A stretch of DNA of 64,000 nucleotides from Octopus sinensis (lineage: Eukaryota): the NCBI RefSeq assembly GCF_006345805.1, contig NC_042998.1:204662001-204726000 (forward strand). The letters run 5' to 3'. How positions within the stretch are numbered: position 1 is the stretch's first letter; every line of letters starts with the position of its first letter. Under the pieces are notes generated by a model that saw only the letters and a list, made by a program, of their open reading frames with translations, did no database searches and had not been told where the DNA came from. Shown piece by piece: positions 17,867 to 48,054 of this stretch. The translations under genes were made by a program, and so were the position numbers.

Positions 17867-18035
17867 ATGAATGACCCACCTCCTCCATATCCCGGTGCAC
17901 CTGGAGCTTCCTATCCTCTTCCTGAAAAGAGTGGCATTCAACCATCAGCCCCAGGAGCATACTATCCAGCCGCTCCTTACCCCACGGCACCTGATATGCA
18001 ACCCCCACCCCCACAACCAATGATGCACCCACAAG
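17867..18035 (+). CDS. LITAF: LITAF-domain gene, first coding exon (exon starts 17839 with 28 nt of 5'UTR); proline-rich N-terminus with PPPY, PSAP and PTAP motifs
   Basis: Acceptor ttgttcttcag at 17838, ATG in the context gtcaccATG, peptide MNDPPPPYPGAPGASYPLPEKSGIQPSAPGAYYPAAPYPTAPDMQPPPPQPMMHPQ, donor G|gtaagt at 18036 (phase 1). The symbol denotes the LITAF/CDIP1 family; orthology was not tested. Confidence 0.9.
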
Positions 18036-19067: not shown

Positions 19068-22000
19068 ACACACACACACACATGCACATCCTCACACACA
19101 CACACACATCCTCACACACACACGCACATCCTCACTCACACACACGCACATCCTCACACACACACATTCACATCCTCACACACACACGCACATCCTCACA
19201 CACACACGCACATCCTCACACACACATGCACATCCTCACACACACACGCACATCCTCACTCACACACACGCACATCCTCACTCACACACCCACACACACG
19301 CACATCCTCACTCACACACATTCACATCCTCACCACACACACACACACACATCCTCACATCACACCACACGCACATCACTCACACCACACATCCTCACAC
19401 CCACACCACACACTCACACACACACCATCCTCCTCACTCACACACACCACACACCTCACACACACACACACATTCACACACACACACACACCTCACTCAC
19501 ACACACGCCACATCCTCACCACACACATTCACATCCTCACACACACACATCACATCCTCACACACACACACGCACATCCTCACTCACACACACACACACA
19601 CATCCTCACACACACACATTCACATCCTCACACACACACGCACATCCTCACTCACACACATTCACATCCTCACTCACACACATTCACATCCTCACACACA
19701 CACGCACATCCTCACACACACACACGCACATCCTCACACACACACATTCACATCCTCACTCACACACACGCACATCCTCACTCACACACATTCACATCCT
19801 CACTCACACACATTCACATCCTCACACACCACACATTCACATCCTCACACACACACACGCACATACTCACACACACCACATGCACATCCTCACACACATG
19901 CACATCCTCACACACACACGCACATCCTCACACACACCCGCACATCCTCACACACACACACGCACATCCTCACACACACACGCACATCCTCACCACACAC
20001 ACGCACATCCTCACACACACGCACATCCTCACACACACACACGCACATCCTCACACACAACATTCACATCCTCACACACACACATTCACATCCTCACACA
20101 CACACGCACATCCTCACACACACACATTCACATCCTCACACACCAACACATCACATCCTCACACACATTCACATCCTCACACACACACGCACATCCTCAC
20201 AACACACATGCACATCCTCACACACAACATTCACATCCTCACACACACACATTCACATCCTCACACACACACGCACATCCTCACACACACACATGCACAT
20301 CCTCACACACATGCACATCCTCACACACACACGCACATCCTCACACACACGCACATCCTCACACACACACACGCACATCCTCACACACACACGCACATCC
20401 TCACACACACACACGCACATCCTCACTCACACACACGCACATCCTCACACACACACATGCACATCCTCACACACACGCACATCCTCACTCACACACATTC
20501 ACATCCTCACACACACACATTCACATCCTCACACACACACACGCACATCCTCACACACACACATTCACATCCCCACTCACACACACGCACATCCTCACTC
20601 ACACACATTCACATCCTCACTCACACACATTCACATCCTCACTCACACACATTCACATCCTCACACACACACACGCACATCCTCACACACACACACGCAC
20701 ATCCTCACACACACACATTCACATCCTCACTCACACACACGCACATCCTCACTCACACACATTCACATCCTCACTCACACACATTCACATCCTCACACAC
20801 ACACATTCACATCCTCACACACACACACGCACATCCTCACACACACACACGCACATCCTCACACACACACATGCACATCCTCACACACACACATGCACAT
20901 CCTCACACACACACACGCACATCCTCACACACACACACACGCACATCCTCACACACACACACGCACATCCTCACACACACATTCACATCCTCACTCACAC
21001 ACACGCACATCCTCACTCACACACATTCACATCCTCACACACACACATTCACATCCTCACACACACACACGCACATCCTCACACACACACACGCACATCC
21101 TCACACACACACATTCACATCCTCACTCACACACACGCACATCCTCACTCACACACATTCACATCCTCACTCACACACATTCACATCCTCACACACACAC
21201 ATTCACATCCTCACACACACACACGCACATACTCACACACACACATGCACATCCTCACACACATGCACATCCTCACACACACACGCACATCCTCACACAC
21301 ACGCACATCCTCACACACACACACGCACATCCTCACACACACACGCACATCCTCACACACACACGCACATCCTCACACACACACGCACATCCTCACACAC
21401 ACACACGCACATCCTCACACACACACATTCACATCCTCACACACACACATTCACATCCTCACACACACACGCACATCCTCACACACACACATTCACATCC
21501 TCACACACACACATTCACATCCTCACACACATTCACATCCTCACACACACACGCACATCCTCACACACACACATTCACATCCTCACACACACACATTCAC
21601 ATCCTCACACACACACATGCACATCCTCACACACACACATGCACATCCTCACACACACACGCACATCACAACAACACGCACATCCTCACACTCACACATT
21701 CATCCTCACACACACACATCACATCCTCACACACACGCACATCCTCACACACACATGCACATCCTCACACTCACACATTCACATCCTCACACACGCACAT
21801 CCTCACACACATTCACATCCTCACCACACATTCACATCCTCACACACACACGCACATCCTCACACACACACATTCACATCCTCACACACACACATTCACA
21901 TCCTCCACACACACATGCACATCCTCACACACACACATGCACATCCTCACACACACACGCACATCCTCACAGACATACGCACATCCTCACACTCACACAT

Positions 22001-25000
22001 TCACATCCTCAACACACACACATTCAACTCCTCACACCACGCACATCCTCACACACACACATTCACATCCTCACACTCACACATTCACATCCTCACAACA
22101 CGCACATCCTCACACACACATGCACATCCTCACACACACACGCACATCCTCACACACACACGCACATCCTCACACACACACATTCACATCCTCACACACA
22201 CACATTCACATCCTCACACACACACATTTCAATCCTCACACACACATTCACATCCTCCACACACATTCACATCCTCCACACACACATCATATCCTCACAC
22301 ACACACATTCACATCCTCACACTCACACATTCATATCCTCACACACACACATTCACATCCTCACACACATATTCACATCCTCACACTCACACATTCATAT
22401 CCTCACACACACGCACATCCTCACACACACATGCACATCCTCACACACACACGCACATCCTCACACACACACGCACATCCTCACACACACACATTCACAT
22501 CCTCACACACACACATTCACATCCTCACCACTCACACATTCATAATCCTCACACACACACATTCACATCTCACACACATTCACATCCTCACATCTCACAC
22601 TCACACATCACATCCTCACACACACGCACATCCTCACACACACATGCACATCCTCACACACACCACGCACATCCCACACACCACACGCACATCCTCACAC
22701 ACACACATTCACATCCTCACACACACACATTCACATCCTCACACACACACATTCACATCCTCACACACACATTCACATCCTCACACACACACATTCACAT
22801 CCTCACACACACACGCCACACCTCACACACACACATTCACATCCTCACACACACACATTCACATCCTCACACACACACATGCACATCCTCACACACACAT
22901 GCACATCCTCACACCAACCCGCACATCCTCACAGACATACGCACATCCTCACACTCACACATTACAACCCACAATCCTCACACACACACACATTCACATC
23001 CTCACACACACGCACATCCTCACACACACATGCACATCCTCACACACACACGCCACATCCTCACACACACACGCACATCCTCACACACACACATTCACAT
23101 CCTCACACACACACCATTCACATCCTCACACACACACATTCACATCCTCACAACACATTCACATCCGCCACACACACACATTCACATCCTCACACCAACA
23201 CATTCATATCCTCACACACACACATTCACATCCTCACACTCACACATTCATATCCTCACACACACACATTCACATCCTCACACACACATATTCACATCCT
23301 CACACTCACACATTCATATCCTCACACACAACGCACATCCTCACACACACATGCACATCCTCACACACACACGCACATCCTCACACACACGCACATCCTC
23401 ACACACACACATTCACATCCTCACACACACACATTCACATCCTCACACTCACACATTCATATCCTCACACACACACATTCACATCCTCACACACACACAT
23501 TCACATCCTCACACTCACACATTCACATCCTCACACACACGCACATCCTCACACACACATGCACATCCTCACACACACACGCACATCCTCACACACACAC
23601 GCACATCCTCACACACACACATTCACATCCTCACACACACACATTCACATCCTCACACACACACATTCACATCCTCACACACACATTCACATCCTCACAC
23701 ACACACATTCACATCCTCACACACACACATTCATATCCTCACACACACACATTCACATCCTCACACACACACATTCATATCCTCACACACACACATTCAC
23801 ATCCTCACACACACACATTCACATCCTCACACTCACACATTCATATCCTCACACACACACATTCATATCCTCACACACATTCACATCCTCACACACACAC
23901 ATTCACATCCTCACACACACACATTCATATCCTCACACACACGCACATCCTCACACACACACATGCACATCCTCATACTCACACATTCACATCCTCACAC
24001 ACATGCACATCCTCACATACACACGCACATCCTCACACACACACACGCACATCCTCACACACACACGCACATCCTCACACAACACACATGCACATCCTCA
24101 TACACACACACGCACATCCTCACTCACACACACGCACATCCTCACACACACACGCACATCCTCACACTCACACATTCATATCCTCACACACACACATTCA
24201 TATCCTCACACACATTCACATCCTCACACACACACATTCACATCCTCACACTCACACATTCACATCCTCACACACATGCACATCCTCACACACACACGCA
24301 CATCCTCACACACACACATGCACATCCTCACACACACACATTCATATCCTCACACACACACATGCACATCCTCACACACACACGCACATCCTCACACACA
24401 CACACGCACATCCTCACACACACACACGCACATCCTCACACACACACATTCATATCCTCACACACACATTCACATCCTCATACACACACGCACATCCTCA
24501 CACACACGCACATCCTCACACACACACATTCACACCCTCACACACACACATTCACATCCTCACACACACACATTCACATCCTCACACACACGCATGCACA
24601 TCCTCACACACACACACGCACATCCTCACACACACACATTCACATCCTCACACACACACATTCACATCCTCACACACACACATTCACATCCTCACACACA
24701 CACATTCACATCCTCACACACACACATTCACATCCTCACACACACGCATGCACATCCTCACACACACACATTCACATCCTCACACACACACATTCACATC
24801 CTCACACACACACACACACATCCTCACACTCACACATTCACATCCTCACACACACACATTCACATCCTCACACACACACACACACATCCTCACACTCACA
24901 CATTCACATCCTCACACACACACATTCACATCCTCACACACACACATTCACATCCTCACACACACAGACACACATCCTCACACTCACACATGCACATCCT

Positions 25001-25398
25001 CACACACACACGCACATCCTCACACACACACATCCTCACACACACACACGCACATCCTCACACACACACCATTCACATCCTCACACACACACCATTCACA
25101 TCCTCACACACACACACACACACATCCTCACACTCACACATGCACATCCTCACACACACACACATTCACATCCTCACACACACACATCCTCACACACACC
25201 ATTCACATCCTCACACACACACCATTCACATCCTCACACACACATTCACATCCTCACACACACACATTCACATCCTCACACACACACACACACATCCTCA
25301 CACTCACACATGCACATCCTCACACACACACGCACATCCTCACACACACACATCCTCACACACACACACGCACATCCTCACACACTCACACACACATC
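19068..25398. repeat. 6.3-kb CA-rich satellite with unit (CG/TT/TG)CACATCCT(CA)n, about 20-24 bp, in LITAF intron 1
   Basis: Direct reading; variants CATATCCT (distal) and CCTCACTCA (proximal). Confidence 0.97.
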
Positions 25399-26375: not shown

Positions 26376-26405
26376 AATATGGACCAGCTCCCCTTGGTGG
26401 CCAAG
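26376..26405 (+). CDS. LITAF: LITAF gene microexon 1 (30 nt, phase 1-1): (E)YGPAPLGGQ
   Basis: Long pyrimidine tract ending tttaatctatttcag|AATATGGACCAGCTCCCCTTGGTGGCCAAG|gtaact; frame-preserving and compositionally matched to the flanking exons. Confidence 0.8.
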
Positions 26406-26559
26406 GTAACTATTATCTCAACAATTTCCTTTTAGATTCCTACGCAACAGTTTAACCATGAATGACAGGTCCAATATCCAAACCCTGTCTCTGTCTCTCT
26501 CGACTCGGATGGAATTCTGGGATATAAAACCTTCAGTGATCCACTCAAGTGAATTTTGT

Positions 26560-26940
26560 CCAAACTTACATTTTCATCCACGGCATGTAAAAACCACCAA
26601 CTGATCGTGGTCGTTGCCAGCCTCCCCTGGCACCTGTGCCGGTGGCACATAAAAAGCACCATCCATACGTGGTCGATGCCAGTGCCACCTTGACTGGCTT
26701 CCGTGCCAGTGGCATGTAAAAAGCACCAACCAATCGTGGCCGTTGCCAGCCTCCCCTGGCACCTGTGCCGGTGGCACATAAAAAGCACCCATTATACTCA
26801 CAGAGTGGTTGGCATTAGGAAAGGCATCCAGTTGTAGAAGCTCTGCCAGATCAGACTGGAGCCTGGCGCAGCTTCCTGGCTTCCCAGACTCCGGTCAAAC
26901 CGTCCAACCCATGCTAGCATGGAAAACGGACGTTAAACTT
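26560..26940 (+). mobile_element. RTE-tail element with about 60-bp subrepeats
   Basis: gtgccggtggcacataaaaagcacc units; ends ggacgttaaac. Confidence 0.85.
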
Positions 26941-27699
26941 AATAGGGCTCAGCCATCTTGTTTCCATGTTGTATAAGTGACCGTGGTCACAACATTCCCT
27001 TCACAAGGGTCCTTATTTACAGCTGAATGGACTGAAGCAGTGTGTATTGGAGTAGTTTGCTTCAGAACAAACTGCACTGCTTGATCCAGGAATTGAGAGA
27101 AAACCTTTATTCCAGGTTTTGTTGAGTTTAGTTTAGTTGTATCAATTTATATTCATCCTGCTGTTGTTTAACTGTAGGTCAGTCCAGATCAAGGAAACCT
27201 ATAATGAAAGACATTCCAGCCATGAGCATCCTGTCTTTTTAGCATTGTGTAAGGATGTATGTATTCTTTCCTTGTTTAAGACAATAAGGTGTGATTTTAA
27301 GAATTTGCTGCTATTTCTAGCAGTTCCAGAGACTATATAGAGACTCTCTTTGTTTGTATTACTTTCGTTCATGATGGAGACAAATCTATCACTGATGAAT
27401 CTATTTTAAGTATCTAAGATGGATATGGATTGACTTGAGGCTGGATGGCCATCTGTGAAGCATTGAAATCAAAGCTATTTGTATATTAATCAAATGGCCT
27501 TTGTTATGATAAAATCGTTTCCCTTTTTGCTTTTTTTCAGATTTAATTTATCTAAAACTCTTTCTTTTTTTTTTTAGGTAAACTGGAACTTTTATTTCTT
27601 CAAGCTTTCAGCTTCATCACCATCACTGCCATCTTCATCTTCCTCATCATCACCACCACCTCCACCATCACCACTACCTACAATGTTTCTACTTGTTGT

Positions 27700-27940
27700 T
27701 GTTGCTGTTGTATACAATTCTGATTTCAGATTGTGGGACAAGGCCAGAAAGTTTGGAGAAGAAGCTAATCAATTACATTGACCCCAGTGTATTACTGGTA
27801 CTTATTTTATTGACCCTGAAAGGATGAAAGGCGAAGTCCACCACGGCAGAATTTGAATGCAGTGTGCAAAGACAAACAGACAGACAGACGAAATTCCGCT
27901 CGGCATTTTGCCTACTGTGCTAACAATTCTTCCAGCTGGA
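27700..27940 (-). mobile_element. Meta-like tRNA SINE
   Basis: ttgaccctgaaaggatgaaaggcgaagtccacc...gaaattccgctcggcatttt. Confidence 0.65.
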
Positions 27941-28374
27941 CTCTATTACAAAATATTGACCAAACTAGGAATTGTTGTTGTTCCACCAATGACCTCTCCC
28001 CACCCGACACTCTGACATTTCTTGTAATCTGTTTCCAATACTACATCACCCACCTTTTCACAGTCCTGTCTGTTGCAGATATTCTGATGAAAACTTCCTT
28101 CTTCCTCACTTCCCCACCACCACCACCACCACCCAGTCTTGGGTTGTGGTCTGGGTTGAGGCTCCGTGAAAAGCCACAGGCGCTGCCCTTTCAGCATCCT
28201 CATTTAACATCCACTTTTCAATGCTTATCTTGGGTCTGGTGGAAGCAAACGTTCCTCAGCCGGATGGGCGCCCTTCCTGTCACCCACCCTCCACTCTTCC
28301 AAGCTTGAACTTGTTTTCCATGGAACACGGAAAACGATATTTATTGATAACTATCCCACGCTGTTTAGGCAAGG

Positions 28375-28755
28375 ATATTTGTTTCAGCCACGGCCATGCT
28401 GGGGCACCACCTTGAAGAGGTTTTACTCAAATGAATCAACCCCAGGACTTATTTTAAGCCTAGTACTTATTCTATCAGTCTTTTGGGTTGAATCGCTAAG
28501 TTATGGGGATGTAAACACACCAACACCGGTTGTCAAGCAGTGGGGGTGGGGTGGACAAACACAGACAAGAACACACATGCATATACATATAGATGATGAT
28601 GGGCTTCTTTCAGTTTCTATCTACCAAATCCACTTACAAGCCTTTGGTTGGCCCGAGGCTATAGTAAAAGACACTTGCCCATGGTGCCGTGCTGTGGGAC
28701 TGAACCTGGAACCATGTGGTTGGGAAGCAAGCTTCTTACCACACAGCCACATGGT
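28375..28755 (-). mobile_element. tRNA/CORE-like SINE, near full length
   Basis: gtttcagccacggccatgctggggcacc...gacacttgccc...gggactgaacc...cttaccacacagccac. Confidence 0.85.
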
Positions 28756-28949
28756 TTGAGGGGAAACTGAAAAAACAAGTTTCCAAGAATTTCAAATGAC
28801 TTTTTCTTCTATACAGATTAGCAGTCGTTGTTTTGTGTAGAACGGTAGAAGCAGCTAGCAGTTATTTGCAATTAACAGCTAATTACAATTAACTATAATT
28901 CATGTAACCTCGTTTGTCATCAATTCATTAATCAGGGGTCAGAATTAAT

Positions 28950-29577
28950 ATGGTACATTCATGGGATGGATGAGGAGAGCTGTGTGAAGAAGTGTCACAC
29001 CCTAACAGTGGAAGGAATCCATGGAAGAGGGAGACCCAGGAAGACATGGAATGAGGTGGTGAAGCATGACCTTCGAACACTGGGCCTTACAGAAGCAATG
29101 ATAAGAGACTGAGACCTTTGGAGATATGCAGTGATTGGGAAGACCTGGCAGGCCAAGTGAGATCACAGCCATAGCCTATACCAGTGTTGCATAACCAGAC
29201 CATTTAAAAAGTACCCTTGAATCATCAGGCGATATGCTGTGCTTGAGAAGACCTACTGAGTCAAATTAAAATCAAAAATCAAAATCAAATTAAAATTGAA
29301 ATCAGGAATGGAAAATGTAGTTGTGACCGATGCTAGTGCCACCTGACTGGCACCTGTGCTGGTGGCACATAATAAACACCATTCAAGTGTGGGTTGATGC
29401 CAGTGCAGCCTGATTGGCCCTCATACTGGTGGCACGTAAAAAGCACTCACTACACTCTTGGAGTAGTTGGTGTTAGGAAGGGTATCCAGCTGTAGAAATA
29501 TTGCCAGATCGAATAAGAGAGCCTGGTGCAACCCATGCCAGCATGGAAAGCGGACGTTAAACAATGATGATGATGAT
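28950..29577 (+). mobile_element. RTE LINE 3' fragment (ORF C-terminus, 3'UTR, GAT tail)
   Basis: ggatgaggagagctgtgtgaagaagtg...ggaagagggagacccaggaagacatggaatgaggtggtgaagcatgacctt (GRGRPRKTWNEVVKHDL). Confidence 0.85.
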
Positions 29578-29578
29578 T

Positions 29579-29841
29579 GCCTTTACAAAGTGCATGGAAA
29601 CTAATTCATTTATCCTTGTTGTCCTTTTGTTTTATATCGCACATTCGGATGGTATACCTTTGCCGATGATGTACCTCCACTCAACTACCAAACTCTCAAT
29701 TCCGACGACTCAACAGAACTCGACGTCTAGTCTACCAACAGCTCCAGCTTGCTCTACTTGATGCTTCTCGTCTAGCTATCACGTCCACTATTTATACGTA
29801 TTGGACTAGCCTACTTATCATCTGGGGGTGTCCACACAACA
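29579..29841. mobile_element. Possible solo LTR
   Basis: CpG-enriched unique block with TG...CA ends (ends ccacacaaca) and a TATA-like gtataaatag on the minus strand; no TSD found. Confidence 0.3.
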
Positions 29842-30505
29842 TTTTGGAACCAAACTTCCAAGATAAACAAGGACAGATGTATAATCAGAGTTTGTTGAAT
29901 GTCAGAGATTAATTAGGTTCATCAATTAGACATATTAATATTCTGTATGCTCTCTCTCTCTTTCTCTCTCTCTCCTTTCATCTTGCAAGGTATGTGGTGA
30001 CCCTGTCAGTGATGGTGCCAGATAAAATGCACCCAGTCCACTCTGTAAAGTGGTTGGCATTATAAGGGCCTCCACCTGTGGAAACCAAAAGAGACTAATT
30101 CTCTCTGATACAGCTCTCCAGCCTTGCCAGCCCCTGTCAAACCATCCAACCCATGCCAGCATGGAAAACAGATATTAAATGAGGATTATGATGATGTCAC
30201 TGCAAACCCTCCTTAATTTTCCATAGATTCTAGATTTTATCCTGTAATATATGATCTGCATAATCAAAACCAATTTAATTACAGTTAATTACTCTTACAC
30301 GTTTAACTTAATGGAATATTTTCTTGTATTCAGATGAAGACCAAAATATATTTATTTTATTTAATTTCTCAGTATCATTTTGGTTTATGATAACATTGTT
30401 TTTTTTTTTTCTTTCCCAATGAAGTCTTTCCAAATTCTTCAAACCCTTTGTTCTCATCTAAATACCCTAATTAAGCCTGCTTTTCTTCTAATTCCTGTCT
30501 TTCAG

Positions 30506-30538
30506 CTTGGATTCCTCCTCCTCCACCTCCTCCTCATG
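30506..30538 (+). CDS. LITAF: LITAF gene microexon 2 (33 nt, phase 1-1): (A)WIPPPPPPPH
   Basis: ttttcttctaattcctgtctttcag|CTTGGATTCCTCCTCCTCCACCTCCTCCTCATG|gtaagt; strong acceptor and donor, frame-preserving. Confidence 0.75.
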
Positions 30539-31149
30539 GTAAGTTATTATTCCTCCTCGTCCTCCTCCTCCTCTTCCACTCATGTGGCACACTAACCTAA
30601 CCCTAATCATGTAGAACATTGCACTGTGTTGACTATTTAAGTCTAAGACCTAGTCTTCATCAAAAGTCATTAGTCAGTGGCCTCATTCACCTAATCCTCA
30701 CTCATTAATCTTGGGTCTTGTCATCAATCAATGCTAATTTTTCTTTTTTTGTTTTCTTTTTTTGTCATTTAAATATCTTACATTCATTGATACCACCTGA
30801 AACCATTGGTTGTACAAAATGGTTGGCTCTCAGCTGCCGTCTCTCCAACTTTCACTGTTTACTGAAAGCAACAACAGACATTGTTTTCAGGAATATGAAA
30901 AAAATAAATTCAAAAACTTTATAACTTTATTCCCATGGACAGAAATTGGTGCAGAAGTTTTTAAACATTGACTGCCTTCCATTCAATATTCACTGCTGGC
31001 TAGCAACAGTTTACTGTAAGCTGTTTCATATTCATTGATAACTGTTTAACATTCACTGCTGAATGTTGATATTCCCCATTGGCTGATAAATCTTCTCTGC
31101 AGTCTATTTGATATTCACTGTCAGTGTGAAAATATTTACTACTGAATAT

Positions 31150-31379
31150 TTAACCCTTTCGTTACTGTATCTATTTTGAGATGTTCTGTGTTTCTTTCAA
31201 TCATTTTAAAATATAACCAAGAATTTAGTAAAATAACTTGGTTATCATTGAAGCTAGTGTTAGGAACGTAAATTGTGACTAAGGTTTGGTGGAAGATTTT
31301 AATTCAAAACTTATGAAAACAAGACTTTGTACTACAGAGCCAGAGCTGGTTTTGGCCGGGTTGGTAATGAAAGGGTTAA
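31150..31379. mobile_element. piggyBac-type MITE, family A
   Basis: TTAA|ccctttcgttac ... gtaatgaaaggg|TTAA (11/12 TIR match); decayed copy at about 32460-32655. Confidence 0.85.
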
Positions 31380-32751
31380 CTAAATATGTAAATGCTAACA
31401 AAATGGTATAACCTTATGTGGACCTTAATACAGGACTTTTCAAACTGTGCTCTGAAAATGAAATAATTATTTTTAAAAAATACACAAATTTTACATATTG
31501 TTTTCATAATTATACTTTGGGTAAAAATATTTTTTGATTTACTAATGTTTAAAATCATTTATTAGTTAAAATAGATAAATCACCCCCTCCCCCACACCTT
31601 TTTTTAGTATATTACCAAAAACCTGTACAAGTGCCTGACTTTTTTTTTCACAAAGTGCTCTAAAATACTTTTTCTGTTTGCTCTAAAGTTTGGGATCAAC
31701 TGCACTAACATGACACAGTGTTCTTACAACATGTAGTTATAACATGTAGTAACAACATGATGCAATTACATGATGTAAAACGAAGAAGAAAGTCCATATT
31801 GTTTCAATCTACTTGGAAGCCACATGTTAAGAGATTTTCTCTCTTCAAAGAGCTGTGTATGGTGTGCATGCGTTTGTGTGTGTGTGTGTGTGCTTGCATG
31901 CGTCCCTGTGTGTGTGTGTGTGTGTGTGTACATTTTACATTGGCTTCAATGTGGAACAAGAGGATTTCTTTATCCAAATTTTGTTTTTTTTTCAGATTGT
32001 TTTCTTCATAATATTTTTGCTTCTCTTATATATAGAAATGGTTTCAGTGGAGAATCTGGTCACTGAGTCTGCTAGAAACAGTAGCCAAATCTTCACAATA
32101 TTCTAACAACTTTAAAACAAATTTAGGAAAGAAAATACTTATTGGAAGATTTGGAAAAAGTAAAAAATGGAATGGTCATGGATGGGACGTCTGTGATCAT
32201 GGCAAATGTTCACATGTTACATTCCATTATACTAAGTTCGTTAATAGTCAAGGTACCGTTGCCCTCCATCAGAACAACTCTGAGTACCTCAGCCAGTGTC
32301 CAACAAACTCCTCTAGTTTTTCTGCTACCTCTTTAGTCGACCCAATATGACACACAATCTCATTTCTCTATCTTCTGAAAATTTGAGACCTTAGATGAAG
32401 AGGAGACCGAGATATTTCCACTGCTACCATTAATCATAATTTTGGAACTGTTTGATCAGAACCCTTTTCTTACCATATTTCTGTAGAAAAGCATTGCTTC
32501 CTTTGTTTCAATTCATTTTGAAAATAATAAAGAACTTACTAAAATAAATTTGTCATTATTAAATGAACATTTAGAATTTTAACATTAAATTTTCATGGAA
32601 GGTTTTGATTTAAAACAGCAAACATGATCTTGGGCATATTGGTATCAAACGAGTTAATCTGTTGACACCCTTGCATGAATTTGCATATTAATCATTTTGC
32701 TTTTAGTCTCAATGAAACTAATGAAATTTTAACAAATTTGTTACCCAACAG

Positions 32752-32769
32752 CCTGGGCCCCTCCTCCAG
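32752..32769 (+). CDS. LITAF: LITAF gene microexon 3 (18 nt, phase 1-1): (A)WAPPP
   Basis: ttgttacccaacag|CCTGGGCCCCTCCTCCAG|gtaagt; perfect donor, weaker pyrimidine tract, GC-rich island in AT-rich intron, frame-preserving. Confidence 0.72.
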
Positions 32770-33013
32770 GTAAGTCCTCACTGCATGCCACGGATTTCAT
32801 TGCAGATTCGTTTTATCACCCTGTGGTTGTTTCCTCCGTATATAAATTGTATTGGTTATTGATCACATTGCATGTTCCTCTGGTGAACATTAAATAATGC
32901 TCCATCTATTGTTTGTCACTTCTCCTTATTTTAATCATCTCATGTTGTGAAACCGTCAAGGATACAACAAAAGAATATTTTAATCCCTGCATCTTCATTG
33001 ATTCATGCCTTAC

Positions 33014-33060
<47 letters not shown>

Positions 33061-33842
33061 TACTGAACAGTGAGAATGAGTGCTCAATACAGCATTAGTG
33101 GATAAATATTATTTATTTATGGGGTATCAAGGCTACCAATAGTTTCATGTGAACAAATCTTCACAATTGTTTGAGCATGCTACATGGAAGTGTTGGTACT
33201 CCTCCCCATTTTGGATTCCCATCCAAAATAAAGATGAGTACCAACACTTCCATGTGGTACGCTTGAACCGTTATGAGGATTTCTTCACATGAAAGCCTCA
33301 GTAGCCTTATTAATCCCCAAATTAAGAATATTTCTCCATCAATGTGGTGTTGAGCACTCATTCTCACTGTGCAGTGTGTGTGTGTGTGTTCTATTTCCAC
33401 TTCTTTAGTTGATTGTAGGTTTAGGCTGTTTGTGCACTTGAAGAGCGAATTGCCGAAATGAGATGCGACATCCCAAAATATTTGCTTTTCTCTGGCAACT
33501 TCTATTCTACCTCACACATAAAAGAGAATGAATTGTAAAATCTGTGTCAACATGGAATTGGTTCACTCCTGGTTGTCATTGTTTTCTGTTGATTTTTTTT
33601 TTGTATCAACCCACCTCCACCTGCATCAGTGTTTCCATTGTCCCCCACCCCTCACTTCTCCAGTATGTCACCTGCTGTAGTACCTGTTGTAGTAAAGTGG
33701 TAGTAGTTCCATAAAGAAACAGCTTGGGATAACAAAAAGCTAGAAATCACTTGTCAGTGTTTTCCTTTTACACATTTTGAACCTCTGTTGTTGTTATTGT
33801 TGTTATTATTATTATTATTATTATTATCGTCATTATTATTAT

Positions 33843-34004
33843 GAAAGACTCTGGCATAGTTCTCACTTACCAGATGTTCCTTACTCGAAAGCAGACAACA
33901 ACAAATCACCAAAGGTTTCAAGTAGTGCTTTCCTCTGTGACTCAAAGAGACAATATTCTCCTTAGAATGTGAGCTGTACCCAATAATACTGTCTTCTGGA
34001 TCAC
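33843..34004 (-). mobile_element. 5'-truncated R4/Dong-like (restriction-like endonuclease) non-LTR element in a (TAA)n microsatellite
   Basis: IQKTVLLGTAHILRRILSL* (QKxxLLGTAxILRxxL C-terminal motif), about 100 nt 3'UTR, TAA repeats on both flanks. Confidence 0.75.
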
Positions 34005-35029
34005 TATTATTATTATTATTATTATCATTATTAATGATAATAATAATAAATTGCAGGTTTCAAGCACTGAACGTATCTTTATATTATACAAATGTTTTAT
34101 TTCCTGCTGTTGTGCATTAAACATTATATTTTTATCTCTCTTGATGATTTATCTAATGACATGGTTGTCTCTCACTTTTTAATGTTATTTCAAAACAAAA
34201 AAATTACTTTCTTTCATATAAAGGTTCTGAAAATAACTCTTTCATCAGGGATCTCCAATTCATTTTCAGAAACAACACAAAATAACAAAGATATTTGAGG
34301 TTTTGTTGGGGTTTTTTTCTTTCTCCAAAGTCTTCAAAGAAGAAAACCATCTTTTTTGGTTCCGTAGTCTTTTAGATTTAACACTTTCTAACTGCATTTC
34401 AATCTTAGAAAAAATCTGTTGTCTTGAAGAGTTGAAAGCTCATTTAAGCATATTAACGAGTTAAAATGTTGATTAGTTAATTAGTCAAGATTTAGATTAA
34501 TCAATAACTGTACAGTATGATCAATATTATATTGTAGTTTCTCTAAAAATGGTAAACTGGCAGAACTAGGAACTCAGCAGAATGTTTGATGGTTCTTTAC
34601 ATTGTGAGTTCAGTTCTGCTGAGGCTCACTTTGCCTTTCATCCTTTCAGGGTCAATAAGTATGAATTGGTTGCTGGGGATGGGTGGGGGTCAGTGTAATC
34701 GACTTATCCCCCACTCTGCCCCTAAATTGCTGGCCTTGTACCAAAAGGTGAAACCATTTTTATAGTTTCATTCAGTAAATAATGTTTATTGGATATAATC
34801 AGGGATTTCTTTAACCCTTTGGCATTCAGACTATTTTGTCAAGTGTGATCCTTATTAATTCCAGTTGTTTTGAATTAATTGTGTATTATCTGGTACCTTT
34901 GAGATTTCAATGATATAATTGTTGATTTTTAGAAAGACATTGTGGGGTAGGTGTGAGAGGACAGATCTGGCCAGTTTGAATGCTTTAGGTTTTTTAAAAA
35001 ATAGATAAAACAAATAAAAGCAAGGCTGT

Positions 35030-35258
35030 GTTGTTAAGAAGCTTACTTTGGAACCACATGGCTTCAGGTTCAATCCCACTGCACAGCACTTTGGTAAGTG
35101 TCTTCTTCTGTAACCCTGGGCCAACCAATTCCTTCTGAGTGGATATAGTTGATGGAAATCACTTGTATGTGTGTGTGTGTGTTTGTCTTCCACCACCACC
35201 ACCACTTGACAACTGCTGTTGGTTTGAATATGTCCTCATAACTTAGCAGTTCAGCAAA
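35030..35258 (-). mobile_element. tRNA/CORE-like SINE fragment
   Basis: ggaaccacatggcttcaggttcaatcccactgcacagcactttggtaagtgtcttc...; this copy reads in the same sense as the 62857 copy, so the strand call is uncertain. Confidence 0.55.
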
Positions 35259-35369
35259 ATCCTGAAGGAGCATTTTCTAAACTTCCGTATTAGAGAAGAT
35301 TTTAATGCATGAATTGGTGGCTACTGTCAGCTTCCAAAAGTACCATCTTTGAAATCACAAGCTAAAACT

Positions 35370-35565
35370 CTCTATTGTGCCAGTCTAATATTTAGGGGTC
35401 ATCAACTCTTCAACTGTTTTCCTAAAGAAATCAGAAAAAATAAAAAACACTTACTGTAACATTAAAAAATAACGTTGGATAAACTCCTAATGATGCTACC
35501 AGACCAGCCAAGCATTCAAGGATACACTCGGGGAAGATCAGCTGCAACAACACTCAATTATAGGC
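35370..35565 (+). mobile_element. Non-LTR retrotransposon ORF C-terminal fragment (clade undetermined)
   Basis: SLIFRGHQLFNCFPKEIR ... LDKLLMMLPDQPSIQGYTRE matches the RGxxLFNxLPxxIR...LDKFL..IPDQP...GY pattern. Confidence 0.6.
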
Positions 35566-37158
35566 CAACTTCCAGCCATAAAGTGACAACAAACTGATAG
35601 AAGAATAAAGGCAGTGCTCCAGCATGGTCATAGTCTTACAACTGATGTGGTTGGGAAGCAAACTTCTTACCACACTGCTGCCCAGATGCTGTATAACTCC
35701 TTGAGAATGGTTAAAAGAGCAGAAAGGAAGCAGCTGGAAGTGCATGGCCAGGACACAGAATGGAACCCGTAACAGCTCCTGCAACCCTTCATCTTTGTTT
35801 CTGTGGAATTCAATTAGTAAACTGCTTAATCTTCTTATTCATCATCATCATCATCATTTACATGTACTTCTATTATTCCTGATGTAAAGAATGGTGATAT
35901 TGTTCCTGTTGTTGCTAAGGTCATTCCTGTCTCCTTGTCTTGGCATCAGATGATGGCTGTAAACAAGCATCACTGTCCTACAAGCGTTAAAACTTCTCCG
36001 ACCATAGGAAGGAAATGTTACCTTCACCTGGATGCAGGTGAGGATTGGTGATAGAAATGGTGTCTGGCCATAGAGAATCTGCCTCAACAAATTCCATCTG
36101 ACCCATGCCAGCATGGAAAAGTGGACGTTAAATGATGATGGTGCACTCATGCCAGTGCCATGAGGGTGGCACTCATGCCGGCACACGTGAGAAGCACTCA
36201 TGCTGGTTCCATGTGAAAAATACCTAGCGCACTCTGTGAAATGGTTGAAGGTGGGCATCCAGCTATAGAAACCATACCAAAACAGATGACTGGAGCCTGG
36301 TATGGGTCCTTTGCCACCACTCCCAGCCGTGCCACCTTCCAACCAAACCATCCAACCCATGCCAGCATGGAAAATGGGTTGAACGATGATCATGAACCAA
36401 CCCACTTCATATGTAAATGTATCGGAATTGGTAAATAGATATAGGAGAGGGGGTCGAAGAAGGGGAAATAAAGAAATGAGAAGAGAAACAGATCAACACT
36501 TGTACATGAGAACCCAAAGGGACCCACAACCAGATGAGGACTGGACCAAAAGACATCAAAACAACGAGTTGAAGATGTGTACACATAAACTGAACTGACT
36601 TAAAAAATAATTTTATTGCAAAAATTCACTTCTCTATTTTATTGTCTTGTTTTATTTTGTGACGGTGATGTTTTGTATTTCTGAGTGCATAGAGTTGGTG
36701 AGGGGACGTGCAGATGTAAGTAGGTCAAGAGAGGTACAGGTATGACACGTATATATCACAGGAATGCAAGTATGATGTATGTATAACGAAAGTACAGATA
36801 TTACATATATATATATATTTAGGAGTACAGATACAATAAACACGAAACAGCTGTTCAGATATGACATCGACATACAGGGATTTGGATACGAGACCAACAA
36901 AGCTGAATGTAAATTTCAATTTAAATTTCTTTTCCTCGTTAAAGAAACTAATCAAAATCTTTCTGATATGAAACCACATTGCCATTCATGAAATTTCTCA
37001 TTGTAAAAAATTTTAATTAATTTTTCTCGTTATCTTTTTCAAATTTCTAAATTGTAGATTGTTATTAACAGATGGCTTTGAATATTCCAAATATTTTTCT
37101 CATAACTGTTGTTGTTGTTGTCTTTAATATTGTTATCAAAACTATTTTATATTTTTAG

Positions 37159-37185
37159 GTTATGGGCCGATGCCAACAGCTCCGG
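37159..37185 (+). CDS. LITAF: LITAF gene microexon 4 (27 nt, phase 1-1): (G)YGPMPTAP, containing a PTAP motif
   Basis: ctattttatatttttag|GTTATGGGCCGATGCCAACAGCTCCGG|gtaagt; frame-preserving. Confidence 0.82.
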
Positions 37186-40100: not shown

Positions 40101-40494
40101 GGCTTCCCATGTCAATTAGATGAGAGTCGTTCTTGAGTTTTTCCATCCAGAGTCTGGCTTCTTCCTAAGATGCTGTCTAGCCCACAATATAAGCTCTCCC
40201 TCAAGGACAAGTATCAAAAATCCAGTCCCCTGATTATTGGCAATGTTTTAGTCCTTGCTGGCCCCTAACCCCTCACATTCTTTCTTCTTTTTATTCCCTT
40301 TTCTTCATTTTCTGTGGCCTCCATTATGAAGAAGGTCTCTAGGAGTTCCTGTCCCTATCTAACTCGCAACACCAAGATTAGGCCTCAATCTGGTCTCCTC
40401 CCACCCGCCCCACTCAAAATAGCTGCCAGTTCTCTCTGAAATCATGTCCTACATCTTTAAAGAAAAGGAAGGATGTATTCAATAATGTAGTTCA

Positions 40495-40830
40495 TCATCA
40501 TCGTTTAACGTCCGTTTTCCATGCTGGCATGGGTTGGCCAGTTCAACCGGGGTCTGGTAAACCATGGAGGCTGCACCAGGCTCCAGTCTGATCTGGCAGT
40601 GTTTCTACAGCTGGATGCCCTTCCTAACCCCAAACCACTCCATGAGTGTAGTGGATGTTTTTTACGTGCCACCGGCACAGGGGCCAGTCAAGGTGGCGCT
40701 GGCATCGACCACGTATGGATGGTGCTTCTTATGTGCCACCGGCACAGAAGCCAGTCAAGGCGGCGCTGGCATCGGCCACATTCGGATGGTGCATTTTACG
40801 TGCCACCGGCACAGGTATCACAACTACAAT
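40495..40830 (-). mobile_element. RTE-tail element with subrepeats
   Basis: catcatcatcgtttaacgtccgttttccatgctggcatgggttgg...tttacgtgccaccggcac. Confidence 0.85.
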
Positions 40831-43119
40831 TAGTTCTTGGTATAAGCAGAAGAGATGGGATGGTCACTGCTGAGTTGGGTTTGGTCTTAGGCTGGCTGGA
40901 CCAAGATTGACTTGGAACTAGACAACAACTGGGACAGTCCACTCATGTCATTGCCTGGTACACCTGGTAATGAGTGATTGAGTGGATTAAAGTTCAAAGT
41001 TTAATTGTTGTTAATGACTTACGAGCTATGGTCAATTGATTGTCTTCAAGAGAGGTCATGGCATTGAGTTGGTGGTCAGCCAATAACTGGCATTTCTTTC
41101 TCTGTCAGAAGTCTTCAGCCTCTGCTTTTTAGTCATTGTACTGTGGCCATGATGGAGCACCACCTTCAACAGACTTACTCATGTTGACCTCTGGCCCTTA
41201 TTTCACTGCGGTCCTTATCTGAACACAAACCTCATGCAATAGGTTCCCCACTTGTAGAACGAATCCCTTTATTCCCATCTAAAGTAACAGCTTCCTAAAC
41301 ATGTTTTCATTTGTCCTTTCATTGGTTAAAATACTTTGCAACATCTGCTAATTAAGTCACCTAGGTAACGAAGCTACTCTTAGGGAATCCTCTGAGCATT
41401 CACAAAGATTCATTTCATAAATACTCTTAATTTAACGAGTACTCTTATTAGAACTAACAACCCCTCCTACACATTTACTACAAACTCTTGTGTTTATCAG
41501 CCGACCTTTGATCCCACTTTATAACTTGTTGTTCACCCCTAATTTCATGTTGGGTTCACCGCATGGAATTGACCAAAACCTTGAAGCTGTTGCCCCAGTA
41601 ACTGAAAGCAATAAAAGAATTGTCTGACACAGGAAGACATCCTTCAAGAATTCCACTTTGACTCTTTAATATTTGAACCAGCCATATTTGGCTAAAAATA
41701 CCCTGACCCTTTTATGTTCAAATTCGCCAGATCTGGTCTCTCACACTGACCCTACAAAGTCATTCTAAAAATAAATCACAACACTGAAATATCAAAGCTA
41801 TAAGATAAAGCATGATTAACTGTAAACAATGAGAATGGATAATGATTGTCTTTGACAAAAGGTTAACGACATCAATAACCTATAGAGATATTTCTACCTC
41901 TCTATCTGTGATTATAACGAAGCTGTTTGTTAATTAGTTACTAGTAACTTTTACTAAAAGAAAGCAAGTATTAAAGTCTACACTTAATTATGACTTAATT
42001 AAGGGTGACACAGAAATGTCTGCAAGTCTTCCTGAATTTCACTGGAAATTCCTGAATGAAGAATCCTCCTTGTTAAATGGTTCATCAATTCTAAAATCTG
42101 CTGAGATTTCTATCAGAAAAATAAACAGTTTTGCAAGAATTTTAAGGAGTTTCCGTCTGCACCCGTTGAGTTGTATGCCACCACTCCACCTCCACACACA
42201 CACACACACACAGAGGAAGTCCCCTAATGAGATAACTTTTGTTGTTTACTGATGACGATCAAAACTAAACAAGAAAATAGGTGAAACTAATTAACATTTA
42301 ATTACTAATTAGGCTTAATTCTTGATTATAATGTCAGAAATCTTTTATATACAGAGAGAGAGAGAAGTAAATGCTTTTATTTTCTCTCTTCTTTTCTCTC
42401 TCATTCTCTCTTTGGAATTTGACTTATTACACCCCCATCCGCATCACTTCCACCCCATCCGCATCACTTCCACCCCACCACCACCCACACCACCACCCAC
42501 ACATATTTTCTCATTGGGTTTTCTTGGTTTCTTTCTGCAGATTCTCTTCTTCATCTAATTTTGTTATCATTTCTGATTTTTAATTAATTTTTCTTTTATT
42601 TCTTTTAACTTTGATATATTTCCTTACGTGGATGTAAATCTGTGTGTGTGTGTGTGTGTGCTTGCATACACACACACACACAAGTGTGAAGTGCTGACAT
42701 TGCTGTTTGGTGTGGAATTTCAATTCCCAGTCGCATTGCTTTGGGTTCTGTTCCACTTCATGTCACCTTGTGTAGGGGGCCTTGCACTTTAACCCCTTAG
42801 TATTCAAACAGCCATATCTGGGGCCCAAGTATTCTCTCTGTTTTATGTCCAAACTGTTATGATCAGGCTTCTCACACCTACCCTACAATCTCGTTCTTGA
42901 AAATCTCAGATATGAGAAAATTGAAATCCAGTGCCGCCTGACTGGCTCCCTTGCCAGTGGCACATAAAAAGCACCCACTACACTCTTTGAAGTGATTGAC
43001 CCTAGAAAGGGCATTCAGCCGTAAAAACCATTCCAAAGGAGACCCTGGAACTTGGTGCAGTCGCCTGACTTGTTGGATGCTGTCAACTCATCCATTTCCT
43101 GAAAGATGAGGATGCATAC

Positions 43120-43805
43120 ATCATCATCATCATCATCGTTTAACGTCCGTTTTCCATGCTAGCATGGGTTGGACGGTTCAACTGGGGTCTGTGAAGCCAG
43201 AAGGCTTCATCAGGTCCAGTCTGATCTGGCAGTGTTTCTACGGCTGGATGCCCTTCCTAACGCCAACCACTCCGCAAGTGTAGTGGGTGCTTTTTACGTG
43301 CCACCCGCACAGGAGCCAGACGGAGCTGGCAAACGGCCACAAACGGATGGTGCTTTTACAAGTATAGATACACATGCAACGTACCTCAATTTAAGTACCT
43401 AATTCAATTGAATCTTATCATCATCGTTTAACATCCGTTTTCCATGCTGGCATGGGTTGGAGGATTTGACTGGGGACTGGCAGGACAAGAGGCCGCAGCA
43501 GGCTCCAATCTGACCTGGCAGTGTTTCTACAGCTGAATACCCTTACTAATGCCAACCACTCCGAGAGTGTAGTGGGTACTTGCCACTGGCATTGGAAATA
43601 AATATATATATATAATCATCTCATCATCATTTACTGTCTGCCTTCCATGCTGACATGGGTTGGATGGTTTGACAGGAGCTGGCCAGGCAGAGAACCACAC
43701 TAGGCTCCAATGGTGTGTTCTGGCATGGTTTCTACAGCAGGATGCCCTTCCTGATGCCAACCACTCTGAGAGTGTAGTGGGTGCTTTTTATGTGGCACCA
43801 GCACT
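43120..43805 (-). mobile_element. Three tandem RTE-tail copies (about 43120-43350, 43418-43590, 43618-43805)
   Basis: Each begins (atc)n gtttaac.tccgttttccatgc and contains gccaaccactc.gagagtgtagtgggt. Confidence 0.85.
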
Positions 43806-45025: not shown

Positions 45026-45194
45026 TGCTCCCACAGACGACCGTTGTCATCCAGCAACACCCACAGATTTTGCACTTTGGTGAATCCTCCGTACAAACTC
45101 GTTGCCCCAAGTGTAACGCTGACATCATGACAAGTATCCATTATGAAACTGGTAACCTCAGCTGGGTCATTTGCCTCCTCCTCAGTTTCTTTGC
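45026..45194 (+). CDS. LITAF: LITAF domain exon, N-terminal half: first CxxC (CPKC) and start of the hydrophobic segment
   Basis: tctctttgattgcag| acceptor (phase 1), (V)LPQTTVVIQQHPQILHFGESSVQTRCPKCNADIMTSIHYETGNLSWVICLLLSFF, donor GC|gtaagt at 45195 (phase 2). Confidence 0.93.
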
Positions 45195-47945: not shown

Positions 47946-48054
47946 TTGTATTTGTGGCTGTTGCTTAATTCCATTCTGCATGGATAGTACCAAAGACATT
48001 GTCCACACATGTCCAAACTGTTCTCATTTTATCGGCCGTTATTCACGCCTCTGA
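47946..48054 (+). CDS. LITAF: LITAF domain terminal coding exon: end of hydrophobic segment, HxCxxC and stop
   Basis: ttttcttttctttccag| acceptor (phase 2 matches), (A)CICGCCLIPFCMDSTKDIVHTCPNCSHFIGRYSRL then TGA at 48052-48054. The spliced total is 555 nt = 184 aa + stop. Confidence 0.93.

What the first reader, a model, noticed from the sequence alone, without database searches (positions are those of the whole stretch)
26376..37185. Cassette of four symmetric microexons (30/33/18/27 nt) in the proline-rich arm of a LITAF gene
Seen: four tiny exons, each bounded by AG and GTAA(G/C), each a multiple of 3 and phase 1-1, spread over 11 kb between the N-terminal exon and the LITAF domain. Every upstream exon ends in G, so junction residues (E, A, A, G, V) are unchanged whichever exons are skipped. 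Inference: up to 16 in-frame isoforms could rewrite the adaptor-binding linker while leaving the zinc/membrane domain fixed, a combinatorial microexon code on an endolysosomal ESCRT/ubiquitin adaptor. I am not aware of such an array being described for this family but could not search.
Basis: partly seen in the sequence, partly recalled or inferred. Interest (0 to 1): 0.85.

Follow-up and report, generated by a model that had tools for sequence, protein, structure and literature searches.

The report
Alternatively spliced microexons in octopus LITAF
The four tiny exons are real coding exons of an octopus LITAF gene, but public gene models show only the two middle ones being skipped (4 variants, not 16), so this is a tidy but fairly ordinary case of microexon splicing that is already in genome annotation.

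Summary
Four phase 1-1 microexons of 30, 33, 18 and 27 nt lie between the N-terminal exon and the LITAF-domain exons. All 16 combinations stay in frame.

The window is identical to assembly GCA_006345805.1 (Octopus). The all-inclusive 184-aa product equals RefSeq isoform X1.

- Ten public protein models from three Octopus species all contain m1 and m4.
- Only m2 and m3 are skipped, and all four m2/m3 combinations are annotated in O. bimaculoides.
- A deposited O. vulgaris cDNA product lacks exactly m3.

m3 looks like a regulated exon:
- Its peptide AWAPPP is unchanged in Argonauta despite four third-position changes.
- The only UGCAUG cluster in the 27-kb interval surrounds it (-80, +13, +100). 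The two downstream copies are conserved in Argonauta.
- m3 joined to m4 creates a second PPxY motif (PPGY).

Similar arrays occur elsewhere. Argonauta has five such microexons. Scallops have six, plus two alternative last exons, and RefSeq lists up to 16 isoforms. A limpet and a hemichordate have only one such exon.

No paper found describes this array. No RNA-seq could be examined, so tissue specificity is untested.

The parts
17867..18035 (+). Coding part of the N-terminal exon E1 (ATG at 17867; 56 codons plus 1 base; ends CACAAG|gtaagt). It encodes PPPY (residue 5), PSAP (26) and PTAP (39).
   Evidence: The CDS start matches the annotated gene range in GCA_006345805.1.
26376..26405 (+). Microexon m1, 30 nt, phase 1-1, peptide EYGPAPLGGQ, donor GTAACT. 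Present in every annotated Octopus isoform, so it is treated as constitutive.
   Evidence: Identical in O. bimaculoides. The 50-nt flanks are 98-100% identical between the two Octopus species.
30506..30538 (+). Microexon m2, 33 nt, phase 1-1, peptide AWIPPPPPPPH (heptaproline). Cassette exon skipped in O. sinensis X3, O. vulgaris CAI9716855, and O. bimaculoides XP_014772880 and X3.
   Evidence: O. bimaculoides has a 30-nt version with one Pro codon fewer.
32752..32769 (+). Microexon m3, 18 nt, phase 1-1, peptide AWAPPP. It has the weakest polypyrimidine tract of the four (0.56). Cassette exon skipped in X2 and X3 models of all three Octopus species and in the O. vulgaris cDNA product AUR53648.1. 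Joined to m4, it creates PPGY.
   Evidence: The peptide is identical in Argonauta, with 4 of 18 nt changed, all at third codon positions.
32724..32751 (+). Conserved acceptor region of m3 (aaattttaacaaatttgttacccaacag), including a likely branch point TTAAC.
   Evidence: Apart from coding exons and dispersed repeats, this is the only part of the window that still aligns by blastn to Argonauta. The hit covers 32724-32788.
32672..32677 (+). TGCATG (UGCAUG, RBFOX-type motif) 80 nt upstream of m3.
   Evidence: Also at -80 in O. bimaculoides.
32782..32787 (+). TGCATG 13 nt downstream of the m3 donor.
   Evidence: At +14 in O. bimaculoides, +14 in Argonauta exon D and +12 in its duplicate.
32869..32874 (+). 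TGCATG 100 nt downstream of m3, inside a conserved block tattgatc...tgcatg.tcc.
   Evidence: At +106 in O. bimaculoides and +103 in Argonauta exon D.
37159..37185 (+). Microexon m4, 27 nt, phase 1-1, peptide GYGPMPTAP (carries a PTAP motif). Present in every annotated Octopus isoform.
   Evidence: One synonymous difference from O. bimaculoides.
45026..45194 (+). Exon L1: end of the arm plus the first CxxC (CPKC) and the hydrophobic stretch of the LITAF domain.
47946..48054 (+). Last coding exon L2: second half of the LITAF domain (HTCPNC) and the stop codon TGA.
   Evidence: The CDS end matches the annotated range.

Best explanation
The four microexons are true coding exons of the Octopus LITAF-homologue gene. 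They encode a modular, disordered, proline-rich spacer between the N-terminal motif region and the membrane-anchored zinc-ribbon LITAF domain.

m1 and m4 behave as constitutive exons. m2 (heptaproline) and m3 (AWAPPP) are independent cassette exons, giving four arm variants. In this species those would be 184, 178, 173 and 167 aa.

Because all exons share phase 1-1, any skipping is in frame and leaves the LITAF domain untouched.

Inference: inclusion changes the length and motif valency of the arm.
- m3 joined to m4 builds a second PPxY (PPGY), a candidate site for a WW-domain ubiquitin ligase.
- m2 adds a polyproline stretch.
- m4 always contributes a third P(S/T)AP.

Inference: m3 is a regulated exon. 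Its weak acceptor is compensated by an RBFOX-type enhancer acting on the conserved UGCAUG copies at +13 and +100.

Partly shown: the array grew by tandem duplication of a microexon together with its flanks. It has expanded separately in octopods and scallops from an ancestral state with a single small phase-1 exon.
For: Locus identity:
- The window is identical to GCA_006345805.1 CM016860.1, and the annotated CDS range is 17867-48054.
- The three window-derived isoforms m1+m2+m3+m4, m1+m2+m4 and m1+m4 match RefSeq X1, X2 and X3 exactly.

Alternative use:
- O. vulgaris has the same three forms. Its 178-aa form lacking m3 carries a separate GenBank cDNA-type accession, AUR53648.1.
- O. bimaculoides has all four m2/m3 combinations.

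Coding constraint:
- All 3 differences between O. sinensis and O. bimaculoides, and all 4 differences in m3 against Argonauta, are at third codon positions.

Regulatory signal at m3:
- It has the lowest pyrimidine content at the acceptor, 0.56.
- The only cluster of 3 TGCATG in the 27-kb interval lies at -80, +13 and +100 from m3. Only 0.8% of 418-nt windows reach 3 copies, and all of those are at m3.
- The two downstream copies hold their positions in O. bimaculoides and Argonauta. No TGCATG lies within 200 nt of m1, m2 or m4.

Motifs:
- PPGY appears only when m3 precedes m4.
- PPxY binding to NEDD4/ITCH and P(S/T)AP binding to TSG101 in the human LITAF arm, and their control of localisation, are described in PMC5142333 and PMC3033906.
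- RBFOX and PTBP1 control of microexons is described in PMC4317164.

Duplication:
- Argonauta exons B and C share flanking sequence, as do exon D and its duplicate.

Other lineages:
- Pecten has six phase-1 microexons, with RefSeq isoforms using them combinatorially.
- Patella and Ptychodera have only one such exon.
- Logan assemblies of sequencing runs (unidentified source, 63% identical LITAF domain) encode isoforms without introns. The isoforms differ by 7-aa units.
Against: - No RNA-seq junction counts could be examined.
- RefSeq X-models are computational, and I could not see what support underlies each one.
- Absence of isoforms lacking m1 or m4 is weak evidence. The protein collection holds no Logan-assembled Octopus transcripts for this gene.
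- UGCAUG motifs are a sequence inference. No octopus RBFOX binding or expression data were examined.
- PPGY as a functional WW ligand is untested.
- Flank conservation between the two Octopus species does not clearly separate the alternative exons from the constant ones.
Confidence: 0.7

Rival explanations
1. Full combinatorial code. All four microexons are independently optional, giving up to 16 isoforms that rewire the adaptor arm by tissue.
For: All 16 combinations are in frame. Scallop orthologues show that this gene family can use five or more cassettes combinatorially in annotated models. m1 has a weaker GTAACT donor.
Against: None of the ten public Octopus protein models from three species lacks m1 or m4. 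No other Octopus isoform cluster appeared in the search of 5.8 billion proteins. Neither m1 nor m4 has a UGCAUG within 200 nt.
Confidence: 0.1
2. Splicing noise. Skipping of m2 and m3 is real but non-functional leakage, because very short exons with weak signals are hard to define. The isoforms would have no distinct roles.
For: m3 is only 18 nt and has a poor polypyrimidine tract. No tissue or functional data are available. The arm is disordered and repetitive, so it may tolerate length changes.
Against: The same skipping patterns are annotated in three species. The m3 peptide and its flanking UGCAUG copies are conserved between Octopus and Argonauta, while the surrounding intron is otherwise not alignable. 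The junction-dependent PPxY is conserved in all three octopods.
Confidence: 0.15
3. Annotation artefact. All four exons are constitutive, and the shorter models arise because aligners or protein-based predictors drop microexons.
For: Microexons are often mishandled by aligners, and X-models are predictions.
Against: A separately deposited O. vulgaris cDNA-type record (AUR53648.1) lacks exactly the 6 residues of m3. Three independent annotations agree. In another, unidentified species, intron-free assembled contigs show length variants in the same arm across many sequencing runs.
Confidence: 0.05

Closest known systems
Human LITAF/SIMPLE and CDIP1 (LITAF-domain endosomal adaptors)
   Same: Same architecture: a disordered proline-rich N-terminal arm carrying PPxY and P(S/T)AP motifs, followed by a C-terminal zinc-ribbon monotopic membrane anchor. 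The Pfam zf-LITAF-like match scores 87.9 bits. The two CxxC pairs and the hydrophobic stretch can be read directly from the sequence. Motif roles are described in PMC5142333.
   Different: The octopus arm is split into four phase-1 microexons, two of them optional. I did not examine vertebrate gene structures here. In a hemichordate and a limpet, the arm sits mostly in one large exon fused to the domain.
Scallop LITAF/CDIP1-homologue loci (Pecten maximus, Argopecten irradians, Mizuhopecten yessoensis; RefSeq isoforms numbered up to X16)
   Same: Same position in the gene and the same phase 1-1. Every exon ends in G|gtaag, sizes are 18-39 nt, and annotated models use the exons combinatorially.
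   Different: The repeat unit is AQPYGQP-like instead of AWxPPP or GYGPxP. There are six microexons, of which five vary. There are also two mutually exclusive last exons, which Octopus lacks. Units resemble each other within a lineage and not between lineages, so the arrays probably expanded separately.
Fast skeletal troponin T N-terminal mini-exon cassette (exons 4-8 plus a mutually exclusive exon pair). This is from my own knowledge and was not checked here.
   Same: A run of adjacent same-phase mini-exons, encoding a variable disordered N-terminal segment, is included combinatorially while the functional core stays fixed.
   Different: Unrelated protein and function. In Octopus only two of the four exons are documented as optional.
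RBFOX/PTBP1- and SRRM4-regulated microexons in animal nervous systems and muscle (PMC4317164)
   Same: Exons of 51 nt or less that preserve frame, lie in interaction-prone disordered regions, have conserved flanks, and carry UGCAUG just downstream (m3).
   Different: Regulation is inferred from motifs only. Tissue specificity is unknown. An adjacent array of several microexons in one linker is unusual for this class.
Schistosome micro-exon genes (MEGs) (bioRxiv 10.1101/2023.06.21.545858)
   Same: Arrays of symmetric microexons separated by long introns that generate protein variants by exon skipping.
   Different: As I recall it (not checked here), MEGs encode secreted proteins whose CDS is mostly microexons. 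Here microexons make up 108 of 555 coding nt, and the protein is a conserved intracellular membrane adaptor. It is not a member of that family.

Membership tests
LITAF-domain protein family (Pfam PF10601, zf-LITAF-like) | Profile match above the curated cut-off | tested here: met
   87.9 bits against a cut-off of 23.8; residues 113-181 cover profile positions 2-69 of 70.
LITAF-domain protein family (Pfam PF10601, zf-LITAF-like) | Two cysteine pairs (CxxC ... HxCPxC) flanking a hydrophobic stretch of about 22 residues | tested here: met
   CPKC, then LSWVICLLLSFFACICGCCLIPF, then HTCPNC, read from the translated model. The feature definition comes from PMC5142333.
LITAF-domain protein family (Pfam PF10601, zf-LITAF-like) | N-terminal proline-rich arm with PPxY and P(S/T)AP motifs | tested here: met
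   PPPY at 5, PSAP at 26, PTAP at 39, PTAP in m4, and PPGY at the m3|m4 junction.
LITAF-domain protein family (Pfam PF10601, zf-LITAF-like) | Zinc binding and monotopic membrane insertion at endosomes | not testable with these tools
   Biochemical property, shown for human LITAF in PMC5142333 and PMC5095921.
Alternatively spliced microexons | Length of 51 nt or less (strict definition 27 nt or less) and frame-preserving | tested here: met
   Lengths are 30, 33, 18 and 27 nt, all multiples of 3. Only m3 and m4 meet the strict limit.
Alternatively spliced microexons | Documented inclusion and skipping in transcripts | tested here: inconclusive
   Annotated isoforms and one cDNA-type record show m2 and m3 skipping in three species. 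None shows m1 or m4 skipping. No read-level data could be examined.
Alternatively spliced microexons | Conserved flanking intron sequence and regulator motifs | tested here: met
   Met for m3 only. Its acceptor region and two downstream UGCAUG copies are conserved between Octopus and Argonauta. Not met for m1, m2 or m4.
Alternatively spliced microexons | Tissue-specific (for example neural) inclusion | not testable with these tools
   No RNA-seq access. The preprint that covers O. bimaculoides tissues has no supplements held.
Combinatorial mini-exon cassette (troponin-T type) | Several adjacent same-phase cassettes that are each independently optional | tested here: not met
   In Octopus, two of the four exons are optional, and all four combinations of those two are seen. 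The feature is met in Pecten, where five of six exons vary.
Schistosome-type micro-exon genes | Most of the CDS made of symmetric microexons, and a secreted product | tested here: not met
   Microexons make up 108 of 555 coding nt, about 19%. The product has no N-terminal signal-like segment and carries a membrane-anchor domain.

The most novel reading that the evidence does not exclude
Mollusc LITAF genes carry a microexon array that keeps growing by tandem duplication and that acts as a tunable valency code for WW-domain, ESCRT and polyproline ligands on an endosomal membrane anchor. In octopods, an RBFOX-type switch that has been conserved since the Octopus-Argonauta split toggles a junction-spanning second PPxY motif (m3|m4). 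This would redirect the adaptor between ubiquitin-ligase partners in a tissue-specific way.
Probability: 0.25. Interest if true: 0.55.

Novelty: new member of a known kind. Interest (0 to 1): 0.3.

Why it matters
LITAF's proline-rich arm decides which ubiquitin ligases and ESCRT components the protein recruits and where it localises (PMC5142333). [quoted passage not shown]

A natural system in which splicing adds or removes single short linear motifs, while the membrane anchor stays constant, would be a clean model for how motif number and spacing tune such adaptors. The second PPxY and the heptaproline stretch are the motifs concerned.

The comparative picture is also a compact example of how same-phase microexon arrays arise by duplication. 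There is one such exon in a limpet and a hemichordate, four or five in octopods, and six in scallops.

The interest is limited. The exons and isoforms are already annotated, only two exons are shown to be optional, and cassette microexons in disordered regions are a well-known phenomenon.

Tried and rejected
1. Further hidden proline-rich microexons. I scanned 18036-45025 with relaxed donors (GT[AG], any last base). Nothing new was convincing beyond the four exons, an alternative GTG donor and an internal acceptor inside m1, neither of which has any support.

2. A second LITAF gene, or mutually exclusive LITAF-domain exons as in scallops. tblastn of L1, L2 and both Pecten last exons against the whole window found single copies only.

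3. Gastropod structure through Haliotis rufescens isoform X3. No record was found, so I used Patella vulgata instead.

4. Transcript-level evidence for Octopus in Logan assemblies. The Octopus cluster has no Logan members, so I did not spend exact look-ups on the 13 unannotated isoforms. The Logan contigs that were found come from another, unidentified species.

5. Flank conservation between O. sinensis and O. bimaculoides as a discriminator of alternative versus constant exons. The 50 nt upstream are at least 94% identical for all four exons, against roughly 85% for introns in general, so this was not discriminating.

6. Literature.
- LITAF + microexon: 0 papers.
- LITAF + Octopus, splice variants or alternative splicing: only expression surveys, plus a mussel paper that noted a shared 3' exon and a multigene family.
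- A 2026 preprint with O. bimaculoides tissue splicing data does not mention LITAF in its text and has no supplements held.

7. Schistosome-type MEG membership was considered and rejected, because the microexon fraction is too low and the product is not secreted.

Full report
**Observation**

The + strand carries a seven-part coding model.
- E1: 17867-18035. It starts at the ATG and ends CACAAG|gtaagt.
- m1: 26376-26405, 30 nt.
- m2: 30506-30538, 33 nt.
- m3: 32752-32769, 18 nt.
- m4: 37159-37185, 27 nt.
- L1: 45026-45194.
- L2: 47946-48054, ending in the stop codon TGA.

Every microexon has an AG acceptor and a GTAAG donor (GTAAC for m1). Each is a multiple of 3 and is phase 1-1.

It returns only the four exons plus an internal acceptor inside m1. 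First-order Markov simulations give 2.3 +/- 1.9 hits for the splice rule alone. They give 0.03 hits that are also at least 70% P/G/Y/A/Q, against 5 observed.

The constant final G is the normal -1 base of the donor consensus. The invariant junction residues are therefore a by-product.

**Identity of the locus**

The protein matches Pfam zf-LITAF-like at 87.9 bits, against a cut-off of 23.8.

Window 16867-49054 is identical to GCA_006345805.1 CM016860.1:204678867-204711054. The gene called there spans exactly 17867-48054. The species label was truncated in the tool output. From the accession series I recall this as the Octopus sinensis reference, and that is my own recollection.

The window-derived isoforms m1+m2+m3+m4, m1+m2+m4 and m1+m4 are letter-for-letter RefSeq isoforms X1 (XP_036356589.1), X2 (XP_029655931.1) and X3 (XP_029655937.1). 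The exons and part of their alternative use are therefore already in public annotation.

**Which exons are optional**

The 90%-identity cluster holds ten Octopus proteins from three species. Decoding them gives the following.
- O. sinensis and O. vulgaris each have three forms: all four exons, minus m3, and minus m2 and m3.
- O. bimaculoides has all four m2/m3 combinations.
- Every model contains m1 and m4.

The O. vulgaris form lacking m3 also exists as a separate GenBank record, AUR53648.1, named LITAF. That points to a cloned or assembled cDNA and not a genome prediction.

No other Octopus isoform cluster appeared among the hits from 5.8 billion proteins. That negative is weak, because the collection holds no Logan-assembled Octopus transcripts of this gene.

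The documented variation is therefore two cassette exons giving four arms, not sixteen.

**Constraint and regulation**

Orthologous exons were located in O. bimaculoides (L001) and Argonauta hians (L002).

Between the two Octopus species the microexons differ by three substitutions, all at third codon positions, plus one in-frame Pro-codon deletion in m2. Against Argonauta, m3 has 4 of 18 nt changed, all at third positions, and the peptide AWAPPP is identical.

Octopus and Argonauta introns are otherwise not alignable. Outside coding exons and dispersed repeats, the only blastn hit covers m3 and its flanks, window 32724-32788.

m3 has the poorest polypyrimidine tract of the four, 0.56.

TGCATG occurs 12 times in the 27-kb interval. 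Three copies lie at -80, +13 and +100 from m3, and only 0.8% of 418-nt windows hold three copies, all of them at m3. O. bimaculoides has the same three copies, at -80, +14 and +106. Argonauta keeps the two downstream ones, at +14 and +103. No TGCATG lies within 200 nt of m1, m2 or m4.

Downstream UGCAUG is the classical RBFOX inclusion enhancer, and RBFOX and PTBP1 are known microexon regulators (PMC4317164). I infer that m3 is a regulated exon. This is a motif-based inference and has not been tested.

**What the exons encode**

E1 carries PPPY, PSAP and PTAP. m4 adds another PTAP, and m2 adds a heptaproline run. A second PPxY (PPGY) spans the m3|m4 junction and exists only when m3 precedes m4. 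The same AWAPPP|GYG junction is present in O. bimaculoides and Argonauta.

In human LITAF the arm is disordered. Its PPxY motifs bind NEDD4/ITCH WW domains, its P(S/T)AP is predicted to bind TSG101, and these contacts determine localisation (PMC5142333; PMC3033906).

The likeliest function is therefore splicing-controlled tuning of motif number and spacing on a fixed membrane anchor. m3 would act as a PPxY on/off switch. This is inference.

**Comparative picture**

- **Argonauta** has five phase-1 microexons of 45, 27, 21, 18 and 30 nt. Exons B and C share flanking sequence. Exon D has a near-identical duplicate in which TGG has become TAG. Together these show duplication of an exon with its flanks.
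- **Logan assemblies** from an unidentified source (63% identity across the LITAF domain, possibly a decapod cephalopod) encode isoforms of 169, 176, 183 and 190 aa. They differ by 7-aa MYGPPxG units. The one contig set fetched, for the 183-aa form, is intron-free, and that form is found in many sequencing runs.
- **Pecten maximus** has six phase-1 microexons of 39, 36, 30, 21, 21 and 18 nt, all ending G|gtaag, plus two mutually exclusive last exons. Nine of its RefSeq isoforms decode to seven arm patterns.
- **The limpet Patella vulgata and the hemichordate Ptychodera flava** have only one such exon, of roughly 27-39 nt. The rest of the arm is fused to the domain exon.

The multi-exon array therefore looks like a lineage-specific expansion of an old single phase-1 exon, occurring separately in octopods and pectinids.

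**Novelty**

No paper in the searchable library pairs LITAF with microexons. Mollusc LITAF papers treat the transcript diversity as a multigene family or note only a shared 3' exon.

The phenomenon is a known kind: frame-preserving cassette microexons in disordered, motif-bearing regions. It resembles the troponin-T mini-exon cassette (my own knowledge). It is not a schistosome-type micro-exon gene, because only 19% of the CDS is made of microexons. The sequence-level facts are already in RefSeq.

**Limits**

- I could not examine any read-level RNA data, so tissue specificity and the true frequency of each isoform are unknown.
- RefSeq X-models are computational.
- The RBFOX and PPxY mechanisms are inferences from sequence.

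**Verdict**

The structure is real and conserved. The 16-isoform code is an over-reading: two optional exons are documented. Interest is modest at 0.3. The most testable new lead is the conserved UGCAUG-flanked m3 exon that toggles a junction-spanning PPxY.

Noticed in passing
window 19071-25398: A 6.3-kb tandem array in intron 1: period 22, about 299 copies, consensus CACACACACACATGCACATCCT, GC skew near -0.9. In O. bimaculoides the two flanks lie almost adjacent (L001 about 3393-4264), so the array is a species-specific expansion.
   Followed up: partly
L002 (Argonauta hians) 6209-6226 versus 10780-10797: A near-identical duplicate of the AWAPPP microexon with about 100 nt of its upstream flank and about 70 nt of its downstream flank, in which TGG has become TAG, giving an in-frame stop. 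It keeps AG/GTAAGT splice sites and the UGCAUG at about +12, so it could be a dead copy or a poison exon.
   Followed up: partly
window 26388 (inside m1): An internal AG acceptor 12 nt into m1 would give an in-frame 18-nt version of the exon (APLGGQ). No annotated isoform uses it.
   Followed up: no
window about 30552-30582: Just downstream of the m2 donor lies a CCT-rich tract (cctcctcgtcctcctcctcctcttcc) that resembles the exon's own proline codons and is conserved in O. bimaculoides. It could be a relic of exon slippage or duplication, or a pyrimidine-tract-protein binding site.
   Followed up: no
L003 (Pecten maximus) 6786-6806: The scallop 21-nt microexon e5 also has TGCATG at +13 from its donor, the same offset as octopus m3. 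Its twin e6 lacks it.
   Followed up: no
L008 (Patella vulgata) 1001-33639: Three gene models share the 5' exons but end at 13011, 22603 and 33639. This suggests three alternative 3' LITAF-domain modules in tandem. Pecten has two mutually exclusive last exons (L003 18206-18307 and 25676-25780). Octopus has one.
   Followed up: partly
window 26432-26938, and similar copies near 7000-7650, 29320-29580, 40490-40910, 43110-43810 and 46290-46570: A dispersed repeat family is scattered through the introns and flanks. Its reverse-strand ORFs read ...FLCATNTGARGG... or ...MLFMCHRHR.... It has many copies in the O. bimaculoides and Argonauta loci as well, and one copy begins about 180 nt downstream of m1.
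   Followed up: no
window 17832-17866: E1 is preceded by a good acceptor (ttgttcttcag|ATTCATTTG...) 27 nt before the ATG. A separate 5'-UTR exon therefore probably lies further upstream. It was not located.
   Followed up: no
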